Virus record (IMG/VR): IMGVR_UViG_3300010399_000031
Span: 1 to 64,000 of that record
Strand: one strand, 5' to 3'
Length of the DNA: 64,000 nucleotides
Shown here piece after piece: positions 26,521-47,505 of the stretch. Each line of letters starts with the position of its first letter. Within the stretch, counting starts at the first letter, position 1. The notes under the pieces were generated by a model, which worked only from the letters and a program-made list of their open reading frames with translations, had not been told where the DNA came from and did no database searches. Position numbers and translations under genes: made by a program.

Positions 26521-27913
26521 TAAAGGAATGTTGTGAATAGCAATGAAATCTACTCTTCATCCTATGTTAATCGCTTTTGGGGTGAAGACGTATGGAAAAG
26601 ATCGAACCGGTTGAATCAATTGGTTTTCCAGGTTATTACGAAATTCCGGGGTTTAGTTTTCGATACGCAATTGATCGAGAAGGACGTGTAATTAACAAAT
26701 TGACTCGGAAAGTTCTTTCTGGAAGTGTCAATTCAAAAGGTTACTGCCATTATCGATTAATTGCTAACGATCTTCTGGTCTTAACGATCGGGAGACATAG
26801 GCTCCTGGCTTTCGTATTCAAACACCCTGGTGTTTCGTTAAAAGGTCTTGTGGTTAATCACCTGAACGGGATTCCAGGAGATGATCGTTTGAATAACTTG
26901 GAATGGACAACGCACAAAGGGAACATTGAACACGCAGGTATGTTGGGTCTTACGACCAAATGCATACCGGTATCTGTTCGAGACATCGATACGGGTGTCG
27001 TTATAAAGTTTCCGAGTATCGTTGAGTGTGCTCGTCATTTTGGGGTTACCAAAGATACGATCAATTGGCGTGTAAAAGTAGGTGAGGCGAAACTGTTTCC
27101 AGATCGGAAACAATATCGAACCACACGCGCTGATGATCCGTGGATTTCCCCCGGTAATATGGTGGATGAGAAAGTTGAGTTTGGAAGATCGAGATGCATC
27201 CTACTTCGGTACTTGGATAGCGAAACGGTTGTGGTGTTTCCTCAACTCCAACAATTGGCATCGCATCTCGGTGTCTCACCCGCAACCATCACACTCTGGC
27301 TTAACCAGCCCAATCAACCAGTACTCCCTGGTTGCATCCAGATAAAATTGGCAAGTGATCAGACTCCATGGAGAACGATTGCTGATCCTCGTCTGGAACT
27401 TGAAAACTATACGGGTAAAAAATCCGTCGTGGTGACCAAGACAGCAACCGGAGAATCTAAGATCTTTGATTCAGCTGTGGAATGTGCAAGAAGCATGGGA
27501 ATATTGCCAACCACCCTGAATCTCCGACTGAAATCGAAGGGAACAAAAACTTTCTCTGATGGTTTTAGTTATTGCTACTATTCAGATATTCCAAGGTCCT
27601 ACTCGACGGTAACGTTGAGATAGAATGCTCTCTAATTGCTGGAACCCCCTTAGAGCTGATTCACCAAAGCGAAGTGCGAAAGCACAGACGTTACGGTTGG
27701 AAAACGAATCAGATTGGGCAATCAGCAGCCAAGCCTCCCTGCGCAAGCGAGAGGAAGGTTCAACGACTAACCGCTTATCACGGTGTACCTGACCAAGTGG
27801 CAGGGAAATGGGAGCCGTCCTAAATGGACGAAGATATAGTCTGGACATTCAGGGAAATCCTGAAGCAGCACGTAATGGTGCGGCCTAGAATAACGACCTA
27901 GGTGAACATCTCG
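26521..27913 (+). mobile_element. group I intron (1393 nt) with homing endonuclease ORF
   Basis: P AATTGCTGGAA 27634-44, Q AATCAGCAGCC 27720-30, R GTTCAACGACTAA 27758-70, S AAGATATAGTCT 27831-42. P3 GCTCTC/GGGAGC, P7 GACTA/TAGTC. Exon 1 ends in T, intron ends in G. Confidence 0.92.
26592..27623 (+). CDS. intron-encoded HNH homing endonuclease (NUMOD4-HNH-NUMOD1 repeats, I-HmuI-like)
   Basis: HRLLAFVF..VVNHLNGIPGDDRLNNLEWTTHKGNIEHA; three repeats FPSIVECARHFGV, FPQLQQLASHLGV, FDSAVECARSMGI. Confidence 0.9.
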   Translation: MEKIEPVESIGFPGYYEIPGFSFRYAIDREGRVINKLTRKVLSGSVNSKGYCHYRLIANDLLVLTIGRHRLLAFVFKHPGVSLKGLVVNHLNGIPGDDRLNNLEWTTHKGNIEHAGMLGLTTKCIPVSVRDIDTGVVIKFPSIVECARHFGVTKDTINWRVKVGEAKLFPDRKQYRTTRADDPWISPGNMVDEKVEFGRSRCILLRYLDSETVVVFPQLQQLASHLGVSPATITLWLNQPNQPVLPGCIQIKLASDQTPWRTIADPRLELENYTGKKSVVVTKTATGESKIFDSAVECARSMGILPTTLNLRLKSKGTKTFSDGFSYCYYSDIPRSYSTVTLR

Positions 27914-44501: not shown

Positions 44502-44598
44502 CGGTCGGTTCCAACTACGTCTTTTCACACTGCTCGTTATGGGTGTGGAAGGGCGTAGTCTTTTTTATGACCTATCCATAACGTCTACAGGACCAGCC

Positions 44599-45132
44599 AT
44601 GTCTGATCTGTTGCAAGCTGCTATTCACCCGCCCGTAATCGTCATGCGGGCCGCCTGGTACACCGAACTCGCCGGACAAGAGTCCGTGTACTACCCTCTT
44701 GTTGTGGGAACCAAATCCTGGAGCGCACCACCATCTGCAATGAATCTTGGGAGCTGGGTAAAAATTCGCCAAGGAGTGATGGTGCGTAGCAGTTGGGGAT
44801 TGATTAACCTTGCGGTGAAATACGACGGTACTCCCTGGTTGTTGGGTCAGCAACCTTTGTTACCAGAAGATGCGCAACCTGTGAGTTGGACGGCGGATGA
44901 TACAAACTTTTGTTCTATTCATTCAGCTGTCTCTTATGGTAAAACAAGTGTTTATCCGGATGCGCAAACAGTGTCAGTGATTGCCCCGAATCCGCCAGTA
45001 CCCGACCCCTCAGAGCCGAAGATCAAAGGTAATCTGGGACGATCCCTTTTGATTACCGCCACGTTTGCCGATGGTACCTCGATTAGCGATGCATTACTCA
45101 TGTATCCGCAACCGGTACCGACAACGACTTAA
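44599..45132 (+). CDS. hypothetical protein (177 aa)
   Basis: ATG 44599 with AGGA RBS after a hairpin; the track's longer start overlaps the previous gene. Confidence 0.65.
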   Translation: MSDLLQAAIHPPVIVMRAAWYTELAGQESVYYPLVVGTKSWSAPPSAMNLGSWVKIRQGVMVRSSWGLINLAVKYDGTPWLLGQQPLLPEDAQPVSWTADDTNFCSIHSAVSYGKTSVYPDAQTVSVIAPNPPVPDPSEPKIKGNLGRSLLITATFADGTSISDALLMYPQPVPTTT

Positions 45133-45146
45133 GAGTCGAGGTTAGC

Positions 45147-45254
45147 ATGATACTGTTTGAAGAAGAAGTGGCTAATAATCAATGCGCTCGTTATGGTTGG
45201 TCTCGTCCTTACCAAGGATGGACCTTTTTACCCCTAGAGAATAACCAAGTGTAG
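45147..45254 (+). pseudogene. 35-codon upstream ORF beginning like the terminase N-terminus (possible homing-endonuclease remnant)
   Basis: GAGG RBS; MILFEEEVANNQCARYGWSRPYQGWTFLPLENNQV*; its TAG overlaps the AGGAGGT in front of the terminase frame. Confidence 0.5.
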
Positions 45255-45264
45255 GAGGTGTATC

Positions 45265-47505
45265 ATTATCCTCTTTGAATCTGACTGGGGCAAATACCCA
45301 GAAGCTATCGCAGACTTCACGACGAAGAATACCAGTTTTCTGCGCATGGCTCAAGTACTTCGCCACATGGGAATTTCAAACCATACTTTCATGTTGGCGC
45401 TGCATAACCCCGAATTGCAAGGGGTCGACCCGTTTGACTACGAGAATTTAACACTCGAAATGCAGGGGGCGATCGCGCTGGAATGTAAGGTCAATCCCTG
45501 GTACTTCTTTCGAGAGTGCGCGCGTGCGCCGGTGCAAGGTACGATGGAGCCGGCTCAGGTTGAAGCTAACCGTGGCAATCTGTGTTTGTGGTGGTGTTTC
45601 TTTAACCACCTGTTTATTATCTTGATTCAGATTCGCCAGACGGGTAAATCCTTTTCAACTGATTTGCTCTGGGTGCTCTGTTTGGAGTTGATGTGTGAAC
45701 ATACCACGATCAACTTGTTGACGAAAGACGATATGCTACGCAAAGATAACGTCGAACGGATCAAGAACATTATGCTGGATCTACCGCGCTATTTGGATTT
45801 GCGCACACGGGGGGACGCCGATAATACGGAAATGATTACCGTTAATCGGATGGGTAATAAATGGAAAGCGCACGTACCACAGGCTCAGGAAAAGCTGGCT
45901 AATAACTTAGGTCGCGGGATGACTTCTCCGATCTTCCAGATCGATGAGGGTCCCTTCCAACGCAATATCGCCATTGCTTTGCCGGCGGCGCTGGCCGCTT
46001 CCGCCAAAGCGGTGACCCAAGCCATTGAAAACGACACGCCTTACGGTACCATCATGACCACCACCGCTGGCAAAAAGAATGACCCAGACGGTGCATACGT
46101 CTACGAGATGATTGAAGAGTCAGCACAGTGGACGGAAAAGCTTTACGACTGTAAAAATCGGGAAGAGTTGGAGCGTGTGGTGCGCGGCAGTAGTCGAAAA
46201 AAGCTCTACCAGATTCACGCCAACTTTAACCACATTCAGTTGGGTAAAGACGATCAGTGGCTCTACGAGACGATTCAACGGGTCAAATCTAAAGGGGAAG
46301 CAGCAGATCGCGACTTCTTTAACCGCTGGACGAGTGGTTCGAAGTCCATGCCGTTTTCGATTGAGTTGGCCGAGCGCGCCGCTAAGTCAGAGATGGAGCC
46401 GCTTTATGTGGATATCAGCAAACCCGATGGGTATGTGACGCGTTGGTTTATTCCGGAGTCGCAAATCGAACACCGGATGCAGTCAAGTAAGTTTGTGATG
46501 GGTAAGGATACCTCGGATGCGTCCAATGGCGATGATATCTCCATGATCATTGTCGACATCGAGACAGGTGAAACGGTCGCGGCTGGTACGTTTAATAACA
46601 CGAACCTCACGCCGTATTTCCGTTGGGTGGCTTCCATCTTAGTCAACTACAAGAACGTCACTGCGATCATTGAGCGACGTAGTACCGGTGCAGCTTTGCT
46701 TGACGCCTTGCTTTGGATTTTGCCTCAGCATGGGGAAGATCCTTTCAAGCGCATCTTTAACTTTGTTGTCAATGATTACTTGGAGTATCCAGATCGGTAT
46801 AAAGAAATCAACATGCACGTCAATCGGCGCCCCAGCGATATTTACGTGCGATACAAGAAAACCTTTGGTTTCCCCACTTCAGCTTCGGGTGTGACGTCTC
46901 GTACGGCGCTTTACTCGGAGACACTGACTTCTGCCATGCAGCGTTCGTCCGGGAAGATGCGGGATGCCACCTTAATTAAGCAAACGCTGGGTCTGGTGGT
47001 TAAAGATGGACGGGTCGATCACATGCCGGGTGAACACGATGACATGGTCATCGGTTGGTTGCTCTGTCACTGGTTTATGACTAAAGCAACCAATCTGGCT
47101 TACTACGGAATTGATTCGCGCACCATTCTTGCTAAAGCTCAGCCAGTGAGGATTCTCACTCAAGCCGAACAACATGCTTTGAAAGAGCAAGAGCGTGTGC
47201 GTGCTGAGATTGAAACACTTTATAAACGTCTTCAACGGGAGAATGACGACTTCGTTTGTATGCGTATCGAACACATGCTCAAATCGTTATCGATGAAAAT
47301 CGAGAGTAAAGATGAAGACGCGGTGTCGATGGATGAATTGATTCGTCAAGCTCGGGAAAGCAGACGCGAGCGCAAGCGCTCTCCGCTTGGACAAAAAGGA
47401 CAGTCGATCTATCAGAACTCAGGCTACGCAGGTTCAGCCCACCAAGGTGAATTTTCTGATCGACCCATGTCTGCTAATGAAATCTACCGAAAAAGATATG
47501 GTTGA
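45265..47505 (+). CDS. terL: terminase large subunit (phiKZ gp25-like), proposed ATT start
   Basis: RQTGKS Walker A, FQIDE Walker B, MGKDTS and HDDMV nuclease motifs. Frame extends upstream of ATG 45346 as ILFESDWGKYPEAIADFTTKNTSFLR; exact start uncertain. Confidence 0.88.
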   Translation: MILFESDWGKYPEAIADFTTKNTSFLRMAQVLRHMGISNHTFMLALHNPELQGVDPFDYENLTLEMQGAIALECKVNPWYFFRECARAPVQGTMEPAQVEANRGNLCLWWCFFNHLFIILIQIRQTGKSFSTDLLWVLCLELMCEHTTINLLTKDDMLRKDNVERIKNIMLDLPRYLDLRTRGDADNTEMITVNRMGNKWKAHVPQAQEKLANNLGRGMTSPIFQIDEGPFQRNIAIALPAALAASAKAVTQAIENDTPYGTIMTTTAGKKNDPDGAYVYEMIEESAQWTEKLYDCKNREELERVVRGSSRKKLYQIHANFNHIQLGKDDQWLYETIQRVKSKGEAADRDFFNRWTSGSKSMPFSIELAERAAKSEMEPLYVDISKPDGYVTRWFIPESQIEHRMQSSKFVMGKDTSDASNGDDISMIIVDIETGETVAAGTFNNTNLTPYFRWVASILVNYKNVTAIIERRSTGAALLDALLWILPQHGEDPFKRIFNFVVNDYLEYPDRYKEINMHVNRRPSDIYVRYKKTFGFPTSASGVTSRTALYSETLTSAMQRSSGKMRDATLIKQTLGLVVKDGRVDHMPGEHDDMVIGWLLCHWFMTKATNLAYYGIDSRTILAKAQPVRILTQAEQHALKEQERVRAEIETLYKRLQRENDDFVCMRIEHMLKSLSMKIESKDEDAVSMDELIRQARESRRERKRSPLGQKGQSIYQNSGYAGSAHQGEFSDRPMSANEIYRKRYG

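What the first reader, a model, noticed from the sequence alone, without database searches (positions are those of the whole stretch)
45135..45350. Terminase N-terminus occurs twice: captured ATG, and a recoded copy that appears to start at ATT
Seen: ATG-ATA-CTG-TTT-GAA (MILFE, 45147) opens a 35-codon ORF in a different frame. 118 nt later ATT-ATC-CTC-TTT-GAA-TCT-GAC-TGG (IILFESDW, 45265) begins the terminase frame, 5 nt after a perfect AGGAGGT that overlaps the upstream ORF's TAG. An in-frame TAG at 45235 and no ATG/GTG/TTG before 45346 leave these 27 residues without a canonical start. The insert has a hairpin (GGTC-T-CGTCCTT-ACC-AAGGATG-GACC), and its end RPYQGWTF resembles the tail of NUMOD1-type endonuclease domains. 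From memory, phiKZ-like terminases begin MILF..DW. Inference: a homing element took over the native start and supplied a recoded 5' end, then was mostly deleted, leaving TerL dependent on coupled AUU initiation. Alternative: ribosomal bypass or splicing between the matched TTT-GAA codon pairs (45156-61 and 45274-79).
Basis: partly seen in the sequence, partly recalled or inferred. Interest (0 to 1): 0.7.

Follow-up and report, generated by a model that had tools for sequence, protein, structure and literature searches.

The report
Homing endonuclease scar at terminase start
Ten codons into the DNA-packaging (large terminase) gene of a soil jumbo phage lies the 118-base leftover of a selfish endonuclease gene that brought its own replacement gene start, so the enzyme apparently has to be made from an unusual ATT start codon.

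Summary
The window is the start of a 243-kb phiKZ-like jumbo phage. TerL homologues begin M-ILFE.DW.

At 45147 the native ribosome site, ATG and first 10 TerL codons survive as a decayed stub. The stub is fused in frame to the last ~26 codons of an I-HmuI-like HNH homing endonuclease gene (45177-45254; tail HMM E=3.5e-5). The stop codon of that gene overlaps a perfect AGGAGGT. Five bases later, ATT 45265 opens a second, recoded copy of codons 1-10 and the rest of TerL.

Full-length copies of this endonuclease sit at the same spot in seven IMG/VR loci (five lineages) and in cultured Xanthomonas phage RTH11. A 99%-identical pair with and without the gene puts the cassette's right edge at the end of codon 10.

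ATT or ATC at the Met-1 position recurs in about nine TerL lineages. Contigs from four public runs carry the identical sequence. No ribozyme was found here, although a group I intron elsewhere in the same genome was detected, so bypass or splicing is unlikely.

AUU initiation, and any coupling to the 35-codon upstream ORF, are inferred and not shown.

The parts
44599..45132 (+). Upstream gene (177 aa, function unknown). It is also present directly before TerL in the closest relatives.
   Evidence: ORF and start position. The 3' end is collinear with L006-L008 upstream of their TerL ATG. No PHROG match.
45138..45142 (+). Native TerL Shine-Dalgarno sequence (GAGGT). It now serves the 35-codon upstream ORF.
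   Evidence: Read directly. It aligns with the GAGG before the TerL ATG of L011/L012.
45147..45176 (+). Stub: the native TerL start codon and codons 1-10 (MILFEEEVAN). It is decayed: the family-invariant D7 and W8 have become E and V.
   Evidence: 23/30 nt identical to the L011 TerL 5' end, in the native context after the upstream gene's stop. Leader plus stub align over about 50 nt with the downstream copy, 1 of 500 shuffles. Invariant residues come from alignment A2.
45147..45254 (+). 35-codon upstream ORF: an in-frame fusion of the stub to the endonuclease tail. It ends in TAG 45252-45254, 10 nt before the ATT.
45177..45254 (+). 3' remnant (about 25 codons plus the stop) of an I-HmuI-like HNH homing endonuclease gene. 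The catalytic domain is gone.
   Evidence: HMM of six endonuclease C-termini, E=3.5e-5. tblastn of full-length relatives against the phage's own genome hits 45168-45236 at the last residues of the queries. 0 of 5000 shuffles.
45199..45229 (+). 11-bp hairpin (45199-45224) followed by five T. It looks like a terminator and lies inside the endonuclease remnant.
   Evidence: -14.2 kcal/mol, z=-2.5. Its function is not established.
45235..45237 (+). TAG in the TerL frame. It closes the frame 10 codons upstream of the ATT.
45253..45259 (+). Perfect Shine-Dalgarno AGGAGGT, 5 nt before ATT 45265. It overlaps the stop of the upstream ORF.
   Evidence: Read directly. Anti-SD pairing of -11.5 kcal/mol, the strongest of 75 TerL leaders. 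One of only 10 AGGAGGT sites in the 243-kb genome.
45265..45294 (+). Replacement copy of TerL codons 1-10 brought by the cassette (ATT ATC CTC TTT GAA TCT GAC TGG GGC AAA). ATT 45265 is the inferred start codon.
   Evidence: The right edge at the end of codon 10 comes from L028 versus L027 and from the extent of the stubs in the window and in L048. It aligns with Met1-residue 10 of homologues.
45265..47505 (+). Large terminase subunit gene (746 codons counted from the ATT).
   Evidence: PHROG phrog_2 and phrog_32359, terminase large subunit. tblastn finds 315 phage records, and homology starts at residue 1 of the ATT-initiated frame.
45346..45348 (+). First canonical start codon in the TerL frame (codon 28). 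It has no Shine-Dalgarno sequence and is the rival start.

Best explanation
The 118 nt at 45177-45294 are the remains of a mobile cassette that invades the large terminase gene of phiKZ-like jumbo phages between codons 10 and 11.

**The intact cassette.** It consists of an I-HmuI-like HNH homing endonuclease gene, followed by its own copy of the TerL leader, ribosome-binding site and first 10 codons. The cassette therefore rebuilds the gene it interrupts without needing an intron or an intein. The host's original start and first 10 codons are left upstream as a useless stub.

**What remains in this phage.** Nearly all of the endonuclease gene has been lost, by deletion or by incomplete copying. 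The stub is joined in frame to the last ~25 endonuclease codons, giving a 35-codon ORF.

**How TerL is made now (inferred).**
- Ribosomes start at the old native site (GAGGT, ATG 45147).
- They translate the 35-codon ORF and stop at UAG 45252, inside a perfect AGGAGGU.
- TerL is then initiated at AUU 45265, 5 nt after that Shine-Dalgarno sequence, by fresh initiation, by re-initiation, or both. With fMet at AUU the product has the family's normal N-terminus, M-ILFESDW.

**Shown:** the anatomy, the homology of the remnant, the existence and position of full cassettes in relatives, and the right edge of the cassette.

**Inferred:** AUU initiation, the contribution of coupling, and that the endonuclease targets the TerL 5' end of alleles that lack it.
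For: **Anatomy.** Confirmed by direct reading.

**The N-terminal 27 codons are part of TerL.**
- Homologues match from residue 1 of the ATT-initiated frame.
- I2 L3 F4 D7 W8 P12 A14 D17 T20 N22 are invariant in seven TerLs that share 40-78% identity, and all are intact in the window.

**The closest relatives (77-80% aa) lack the insert.** They have the ATG directly after the same upstream gene.

**Full-length endonuclease genes sit at the same place elsewhere.**
- Genes of 261-272 aa, with HNH_3 and the I-HmuI NUMOD-like domain, end 3-10 nt before the TerL start in L023-25, L028, L038, L048, L070 and RTH11.
- Their close relatives L027, L018, L045 and LucasX lack them. That sporadic distribution is what a mobile gene shows.

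**The remnant is homologous to those genes.** E=3.5e-5; 0 of 5000 shuffles.

**Cassette edge.** L028 versus L027: 17/30 identical in the first 30 nt of TerL, then 30/30 in each of the next eight windows. Leader plus codons 1-10 are duplicated in the window and in L048.

**AUU start.**
- ATT or ATC occupies the Met1 position, with a nearby in-frame stop and no canonical start, in the window, L018/19/62, L023-25, L027/29 and L035. L013/46, L048, L017 and RTH11 also carry ATT or ATC there.
- These leaders pair more strongly with the anti-SD than ATG leaders do (p=0.02). The window's pairing is the strongest of all.
- Reporter work in E. coli gives AUU about 6-8 fold less output than AUG, and reports roughly equal de novo and re-initiation contributions when stop and start are close (PMC3592434).

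**The sequence is stable in nature.** Four runs from four studies carry it.
Against: - There is no transcript, ribosome-profiling or protein data for this phage; no RNA run was listed.
- AUU is a poor initiator in model bacteria, and the host is unknown.
- Three cassette-bearing loci (L028, L038, L070) start TerL with ATG. Several loci without the cassette (L017, L018, L027) use ATT. ATT is therefore not a strict property of the cassette.
- An unbiased scan for self-duplication of the TerL 5' end ranks the window first of 75 loci, but only at p about 0.02. The stub rests mainly on its native context.
- The left junction between stub and endonuclease tail is only defined to within about 2 codons.
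- No donor with a near-identical tail was found.
- AGGAGGT is not enriched in this genome: 10 sites, of which at most 4 precede plausible genes.
Confidence: 0.78

Rival explanations
1. Ribosomal bypass (hopping) or RNA splicing joins the upstream MILFE to the downstream SDW. The 118 nt would then be a coding gap or a tiny intron, and TerL would start at ATG 45147.
For: - Removing any 118 nt between the repeats gives a perfect MILFESDW... frame.
- The GAA codons match at 45159 and 45277.
- A Shine-Dalgarno-like element precedes the landing region, as in T4 gene 60.
- An HNH endonuclease cassette travels with the gene 60 bypass (bioRxiv 10.1101/2022.08.31.505936).
Against: - There is no stop or obviously slow codon after the take-off codon, and no stem-loop containing it. 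The hairpin starts 38 nt downstream.
- The nascent chain is only 5 residues, and the gap is 115-118 nt against 50 nt (features as listed).
- No Rfam family matches at E up to 10. Nothing intron-like was found in six loci with the full cassette, while the same search found a group I intron at 92 bits elsewhere in this genome.
- 118 nt is well below the size of known group I introns.
- Exon 1 would end in G, not U.
- Relatives have the same SD-plus-ATT/ATC layout with about 850 nt of endonuclease gene in between. Their stubs are decayed or frameshifted: MISFES.., MITFTED.., MNSIY...
Confidence: 0.03
2. TerL starts at ATG 45346, and the 27 upstream codons are a dispensable, untranslated relic.
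For: It is the first canonical start in the frame. ORF callers would pick it.
Against: - There is no Shine-Dalgarno sequence before it.
- The 27 codons hold 10 positions that are invariant across TerLs sharing 40-78% identity, and all are intact.
- 22 of 27 residues are identical to L011 despite about 13 synonymous differences.
- PHROG 32359 has 21 profile positions before this Met.
- The strongest Shine-Dalgarno sequence of 75 loci sits before the ATT.
Confidence: 0.08
3. A plain mosaic joint: illegitimate recombination with a relative whose TerL had a long intergenic leader. No endonuclease was involved, and the insert is foreign intergenic DNA (terminator plus Shine-Dalgarno sequence).
For: Many relatives have a hairpin terminator, a TTTATGC motif and a Shine-Dalgarno sequence before TerL. 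The insert contains a terminator-like hairpin.
Against: - The insert reads, in the frame that ends at the SD-overlapping stop, as the C-terminus of the endonuclease family found at exactly this position in relatives.
- The hairpin lies in the P-Y-Q-G-W coding stretch. That stretch is partly palindromic in the intact genes too.
Confidence: 0.05
4. A programmed +1 frameshift or read-through at the end of the 35-codon ORF makes an ORF35-TerL fusion.
For: The TerL frame is +1 relative to the upstream ORF. A stop codon lies next to a Shine-Dalgarno-like sequence, which is reminiscent of prfB.
Against: - GUG-UAG is not a slippery context.
- The stimulatory Shine-Dalgarno sequence would have to lie upstream of the shift site, but here it is at and after it.
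- The frame relation between the upstream ORF and TerL differs among relatives: in frame in L024, +1 in L048, +2 in RTH11.
Confidence: 0.02
5. An assembly or sequencing artefact.
For: The record is a metagenome assembly.
Against: An identical region appears in independent contigs from four runs in four studies, 2017-2023, including a distinct strain.
Confidence: 0.01

Closest known systems
MobA element of T4-like phages (HNH homing endonuclease inserted in the topoisomerase gene, splitting it into genes 39 and 60, with the 50-nt bypass cassette)
   Same: - It is an HNH endonuclease cassette that always lands at one site inside an essential ORF.
- It carries a diverged replacement copy ('HomR') of the host codons it displaces.
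- It shows sporadic presence between near-identical phages.
- Decay and 'hit-and-run' loss of the endonuclease leave scars (bioRxiv 10.1101/2022.08.31.505936; PMC2988022).
   Different: - Here the site is codon 10/11, so the upstream piece is simply discarded instead of being kept as a second subunit.
- The cassette supplies a whole translation start (leader, SD, start codon, 10 codons).
- No bypass signals are present.
- The restored gene often starts with ATT or ATC.
- The endonucleases were not compared directly.
Free-standing homing endonucleases that split phage genes (mobE in Aeh1 nrdA; seg43 in phage 25 gene 43); 'intronless homing'
   Same: The endonuclease gene sits inside or next to its target gene without an intron. 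It spreads by break repair with co-conversion of flanks. Small RNA hairpins around ribosome sites are common (PMC2988022).
   Different: Those insertions yield two polypeptides that reassemble. Here a full-length protein is restored by duplicating the 5' end. Cleavage was not tested here.
I-HmuI (Bacillus phage SPO1) and PhiPA3 gp210, intron-encoded HNH endonucleases
   Same: The domain make-up is the same: HNH_3 plus the I-HmuI NUMOD-like domain. PhiPA3 gp210 is a detectable homologue at 29% identity. A paralogue in this same genome sits in a group I intron of an RNA polymerase beta-like gene.
   Different: No ribozyme was found at the TerL locus in the window or in six loci with the full cassette.
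AUU initiation with close stop-start coupling, as in E. coli infC
   Same: A non-canonical AUU sits a few nucleotides after the preceding ORF's stop and behind a Shine-Dalgarno sequence. In reporters, output comes from both de novo initiation and re-initiation (PMC3592434).
   Different: There is no evidence here for autoregulation by IF3. The gene is a phage late enzyme. Initiation has not been demonstrated.
Integrating elements that carry a replacement end of the gene they enter (e14 and phage 21 in icd; tRNA-gene integration). This comparison is from the author's own knowledge.
   Same: The mobile DNA restores the interrupted gene with its own diverged copy of the displaced end. A duplicated, decaying fragment is left behind.
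   Different: Those elements use integrases and replace 3' ends. Here a homing endonuclease is involved and the 5' end, including the translation start, is replaced.

Membership tests
HNH (I-HmuI-like) homing endonuclease gene | Intact ORF with the HNH catalytic motif (Pfam HNH_3) | tested here: not met
   The window ORF has 35 codons and no Pfam hit. Only the last ~25 residues align with the family. The full relatives do have HNH_3. The window therefore holds a relic, not a gene.
HNH (I-HmuI-like) homing endonuclease gene | C-terminal NUMOD-like DNA-binding tail | tested here: met
   Tail HMM E=3.5e-5. 0 of 5000 shuffles against L024, L028, L038 and L048. In L024 the Pfam I-HmuI NUMOD-like match lies at residues 226-245, just before the aligned tail.
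Mobile homing cassette (intronless homing) | Present or absent between close relatives, at one fixed site in diverged genomes | tested here: met
   With/without pairs and their TerL aa identity: L028/L027 99%, L024/L018 98%, L048/L045 93%, RTH11/LucasX 78%. The gene always ends 3-10 nt before the TerL start.
Mobile homing cassette (intronless homing) | Co-conversion tract or replaced flank next to the endonuclease gene | tested here: met
   L028 versus L027: 99% identical on the left, an 876-nt segment in place of a 99-nt one, 17/30 identity in TerL codons 1-10, then 100% for 240 nt.
Mobile homing cassette (intronless homing) | The endonuclease cuts or nicks alleles that lack it and spares its own | not testable with these tools
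   The only lead is that the D7 codon is GAC in cassette or scar alleles and GAT in their partners in 4 of 5 pairs.
Group I intron | Ribozyme core detectable by covariance model | tested here: not met
   No match at E up to 10 in 44800-45700. No intron match in six loci with the full cassette. Positive control: Intron_gpI at 92 bits at genome 89786-90087.
Group I intron | Exon 1 ends in U, the intron ends in G, and size is roughly 200 nt or more (established knowledge) | tested here: not met
   The only G-terminated 118-nt removal puts a G at the end of exon 1. The removed segment is only 118 nt.
Programmed translational bypass (T4 gene 60 type) | Matched take-off and landing codons | tested here: met
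   GAA 45159-61 and GAA 45277-79.
Programmed translational bypass (T4 gene 60 type) | A stop or hungry codon after take-off, a take-off stem-loop containing the codon, and a nascent-peptide signal in the exit tunnel | tested here: not met
   The next codons are GAA GAA GTG. The hairpin starts at 45199. The nascent chain is 5 residues.
Non-AUG (AUU) initiation site | Shine-Dalgarno sequence at 5-9 nt, no canonical start in the open frame upstream, and conserved codons immediately downstream | tested here: met
   AGGAGGT lies 5 nt upstream. The in-frame TAG is at -30 with no ATG, GTG or TTG between. Invariant residues 2-22 are intact.
Non-AUG (AUU) initiation site | Experimentally mapped N-terminus or initiating ribosome | not testable with these tools
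   No RNA run was listed. The phage is uncultured.
Large terminase subunit (phiKZ-like) | Sequence membership | tested here: met
   phrog_2 E=8e-36 and phrog_32359 E=2e-25. 315 phage records by tblastn, the best being FLC9 at 58%.

The most novel reading that the evidence does not exclude
phiKZ-like jumbo phages host a family of intron-free, intein-free homing cassettes. These enter the coding sequence of the essential terminase gene at codon 10/11 and stay harmless by bringing a complete replacement translation start. In that context TerL is routinely initiated at AUU or AUC, with its synthesis tied to translation of the upstream endonuclease gene or, after that gene decays, of a leftover mini-ORF. 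The parasite and its scar would then set the dose of the packaging enzyme and would be hard to delete cleanly.
Probability: 0.3. Interest if true: 0.75.

Novelty: new variant of a known kind. Interest (0 to 1): 0.6.

Why it matters
- **A third way for a homing endonuclease to live inside an essential coding sequence.** Besides introns and inteins, it can sit a few codons in and carry a spare start for the gene. The nearest precedent, the MobA/gene 60 cassette, needs ribosome hopping; this one needs only a ribosome-binding site.
- **Annotation.** In this phage, and in roughly one in eight related TerL loci sampled, a standard gene caller will truncate TerL by about 27 conserved residues or pick a spurious GTG. 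The cultured phage RTH11 is an example: its endonuclease gene is also unannotated.
- **Non-AUG initiation.** Recurrent AUU/AUC starts on a late essential enzyme would be an unusual natural data set. They may point to dosage control of the packaging motor.
- **Phage competition.** Endonucleases of this family have been shown to act as weapons between co-infecting nucleus-forming phages (PMC12908238). A terminase-targeting one would hit genome packaging directly.

Tried and rejected
- **Copies of the insert elsewhere in the genome.** None found by blastn-short or tblastn, so it is not a repeat or a miniature transposable element.
- **tblastn of the 35-aa peptide against 50,697 phage records.** Only chance hits at E>=2. 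The query is too short; the link appeared only once related TerL loci were read.
- **Exact and back-translated pattern scans of IMG/VR for the hairpin or for PYQGWTF(LP).** Either nothing or unrelated short frames. No donor was identified.
- **Metagenome scan with TerL.** It returned only the phage's own contig and one relative at 77% identity. No closer relative, with or without the cassette, was found.
- **Identity profile against the 77% relative.** It is too diverged to show a co-conversion tract in the window itself.
- **Whole-region RNA fold (45130-45290).** No better than shuffles, z=0.18. The small SD-sequestering hairpins in the window, L024, RTH11 and L028 are individually not significant.
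- **Is the ~95-nt region before the TerL leader in FLC9, L017, L018 and L027 a further endonuclease scar?** Not supported.
- **Is ATT a cassette-specific immunity change?** Rejected as a rule. Three cassettes have ATG, and three alleles without a cassette have ATT.
- **AGGAGGT as a genome-wide start marker.** It is too rare and not enriched.
- **Literature searches.** No paper describing an endonuclease at the TerL 5' end or ATT-initiated terminases was found in the held library.
Full report
**What the window is.** The 64-kb window is the first part of a 243,403-bp IMG/VR virus record with an estimated completeness of 81%. The ORF that runs to 47505 is a large terminase subunit (TerL). It matches phrog_2 and phrog_32359. 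tblastn finds it in 315 phage records, all phiKZ-like jumbo phages; the best are Burkholderia FLC9 at 58%, Ralstonia RP12/RP31 at 55% and PhiPA3 at 46%. The gene two positions upstream is the conserved virion structural protein that precedes TerL in those phages.

**Checking the observation.**
- ATG 45147 opens a 35-codon ORF that ends in TAG 45252-45254.
- AGGAGGT occupies 45253-45259.
- ATT 45265 is in the TerL frame, 118 nt after the ATG.
- That frame is closed by TAG 45235-45237 and has no ATG, GTG or TTG before codon 28 (45346).

Homologues match from residue 1 of the ATT-initiated translation, and they do begin M-ILFE.DW. In an alignment of seven TerLs sharing 40-78% identity, ten of the first 22 positions are invariant, and all ten are intact in the window.

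The sequence is not an artefact. Contigs from four public runs in four studies contain it. One is a 2023 strain with eight differences in 2 kb, none of those listed in the region; another is a rhizosphere contig covering 45071-45290 without a difference.

**What the upstream copy is.** The closest relatives (L006-L008, L010-L012, L091; 77-80% aa) have the same small upstream gene, a 21-nt spacer with GAGG, and then ATG ATT CTG TTC GAA GAA GAT TGG, with nothing in between. The window's upstream copy occupies exactly that native context. It matches that sequence in 23 of its first 30 nt. So the copy is about ten codons long (MILFEEEVAN, 45147-45176), not five, and it has lost the invariant D7 and W8. 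Leader plus stub align with the downstream leader plus codons 1-10 over about 50 nt; 1 of 500 shuffles scores as well. In an unbiased scan of 75 loci for such self-duplication, the window ranks first and L048 third, although the individual p values are only about 0.02.

**What the insert is.** The 80 related TerL loci from IMG/VR gave the key.
- In L048 and L023-25, the ORF immediately upstream of TerL ends ...PYQGWIFTPL... or ...PYKGWLFSPLTE. The window ORF ends ...RPYQGWTFLPLENNQV.
- Those ORFs are 261-272 aa proteins with Pfam HNH_3 and the I-HmuI NUMOD-like domain, and they match PHROG HNH endonuclease families.
- The same family lies directly before TerL in L028, L038 and L070, and in the cultured Xanthomonas phage RTH11. 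In the RTH11 record it is not annotated; instead there is a minus-strand hypothetical ORF and a 204-nt fragment.
- A profile of six such C-termini, searched against three-frame translations of the 240 nt upstream of about 95 TerL starts, hits the eight loci with the full gene and then the window at E=3.5e-5. Nothing else scores below E=1.
- Shuffling the window peptide never reached the observed score against four of the tails (0 of 5000).
- tblastn of the full proteins against the phage's own genome places the hit at 45168-45236, opposite the last residues of the queries.

So 45177-45254 is the 3' end of an HNH homing endonuclease gene, fused in frame to the stub.

**Where the cassette ends.**
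- L028 (with the gene) and L027 (without it) have TerLs that are 99% identical. On the left they are 99% identical up to a TTTATGCCG motif.
- An 876-nt segment in L028 then replaces a 99-nt one in L027.
- Inside TerL the first 30 nt are only 17/30 identical, and the next 240 nt are 100% identical.
- The right edge of the mobile segment is therefore the end of codon 10. This is the same point at which the stubs of the window and of L048 stop resembling TerL.

The intact element is thus: decayed stub, endonuclease gene, TerL leader with Shine-Dalgarno sequence, codons 1-10. In the window the element's remains are 45177-45294, exactly 118 nt.

Presence and absence in close pairs (L028/L027 99%, L024/L018 98%, L048/L045 93%, RTH11/LucasX 78%), together with one fixed position in TerLs that are only 45-60% identical to each other, are the signature of a homing element. 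Cleavage itself was not tested. One lead: the D7 codon is GAC in cassette or scar alleles and GAT in their partners in four of five pairs.

**How TerL is made.** The conserved N-terminus has to be translated, and the only open stretch upstream of it is 45238-45264, which has no canonical start. ATT 45265 lies 5 nt after a perfect AGGAGGT. That gives the strongest anti-SD pairing of 75 TerL leaders, -11.5 kcal/mol. If fMet is inserted at AUU, the product is M-ILFESDW, the family's normal N-terminus.

The same solution recurs.
- ATT or ATC sits at the Met-1 codon, with an in-frame stop 12-33 nt upstream and no canonical start, in L018/19/62, L023-25, L027/29 and L035.
- ATT or ATC is also at that codon in L013/46, L048, L017 and RTH11.
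- As a group, these leaders pair more strongly with the anti-SD than ATG leaders do (Mann-Whitney p=0.02).
- ATT is not a strict property of the cassette. L028, L038 and L070 have ATG, and the cassette-free L017, L018 and L027 have ATT.

In every full cassette the endonuclease stop lies 3-10 nt before the TerL start. The window keeps that geometry: UAG, 10 nt, AUU. Here, however, the upstream ORF is driven by the native TerL ribosome site. In E. coli reporters AUU gives 6-8 fold less output than AUG, and with closely spaced stop and start about half of the output comes from re-initiation (PMC3592434). I therefore infer de novo initiation plus re-initiation at AUU. The share of each is unknown.

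**Rivals.**
- *Bypass or splicing.* Both fail on several counts.
  - None of the gene 60 signals is present apart from the matched codons (criteria).
  - No RNA family matches.
  - No intron was found in six loci with the full cassette. The same tool found a 92-bit group I intron next to a paralogous endonuclease in this phage's RNA polymerase beta-like gene.
  - In relatives the stubs are decayed or frameshifted and lie about 850 nt away.
- *A frameshift fusion.* This is unlikely because the frame relation between the upstream ORF and TerL differs among relatives.
- *A start at ATG 45346.* It has no ribosome site, and it would remove ten invariant residues.
- *No RNA data.* No RNA run was listed for this phage.

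**Comparison with known systems.** The nearest precedent is the MobA element of T4-like phages. That is an HNH endonuclease cassette that always enters the topoisomerase ORF at one site, carries a diverged replacement of the displaced codons, decays, and is sometimes lost leaving scars (review PMC2988022). The present element differs in three ways. It enters ten codons from the start, so the upstream fragment is thrown away. It carries a complete translation start. It needs no ribosome hopping.

The enzyme family is that of I-HmuI and PhiPA3 gp210. The latter was shown to act in competition between nucleus-forming phages (PMC12908238). In the library I could search, I found no description of an endonuclease at the TerL 5' end or of ATT-initiated terminases.

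**Verdict.** The finding is real. The window holds a relic rather than an active element. The relic exposes a cassette type and a start-codon habit that appear undescribed: a new variant of a known kind, of moderate to high interest.

Noticed in passing
L098:1898-3087 (genome 88897-90087, outside the window): A paralogous HNH endonuclease gene (305 aa) is followed by a group I intron (Rfam RF00028, 92 bits). Both lie between two ORFs, the second of which is an RNA polymerase Rpb2 domain-6 (beta-like) fragment. The arrangement resembles the PhiPA3 gp210 mobile intron.
   Followed up: partly
window 26592-27623 (+): Another intact member of the same endonuclease family (343 aa; HNH_3, NUMOD1, I-HmuI NUMOD-like). 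It sits between a 1110-aa ORF and the next gene. A third paralogue lies at genome 102575-103591.
   Followed up: partly
L013, L017, L018, L019, L023-25, L027, L029, L035, L046, L048, L062, L097 (TerL start positions as): ATT or ATC occupies the Met-1 codon of TerL in about nine of 75 distinct phiKZ-like TerL 5' regions. Some of these loci have the endonuclease and some do not. Gene callers would truncate these genes or choose a spurious GTG, as in the RTH11 record.
   Followed up: partly
L097:1587-2373 (Xanthomonas phage RTH11, OQ790161.1 about 279586-280372): A full-length HNH endonuclease ORF directly upstream of TerL is not annotated in the deposited record. The record instead has a minus-strand hypothetical ORF and a 204-nt ORF there.
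   Followed up: yes
upstream of TerL in L002, L003, L004, L013, L017, L018, L024, L027, L028, L037, L045, L048, L097; window 44563-44571: A GC-rich hairpin followed by (T)TTATGC/G recurs between the preceding gene and TerL. It looks like a terminator plus a conserved promoter-like motif. In the window a similar TTTTATGAC precedes gene 44599 rather than TerL.
   Followed up: no
TerL codon 7 in the window (45283-45285) and in L011, L018, L024, L027, L028, L045, L048: The Asp-7 codon is GAC in alleles with the cassette or its scar, and GAT in their close cassette-free partners, in four of five pairs. It may mark the endonuclease's recognition site or the basis of immunity.
   Followed up: no
L038:1-300 and L070:1485-1742: These loci carry a second, partial endonuclease-like stretch just upstream of the full one. 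This suggests tandem or nested invasions.
   Followed up: no
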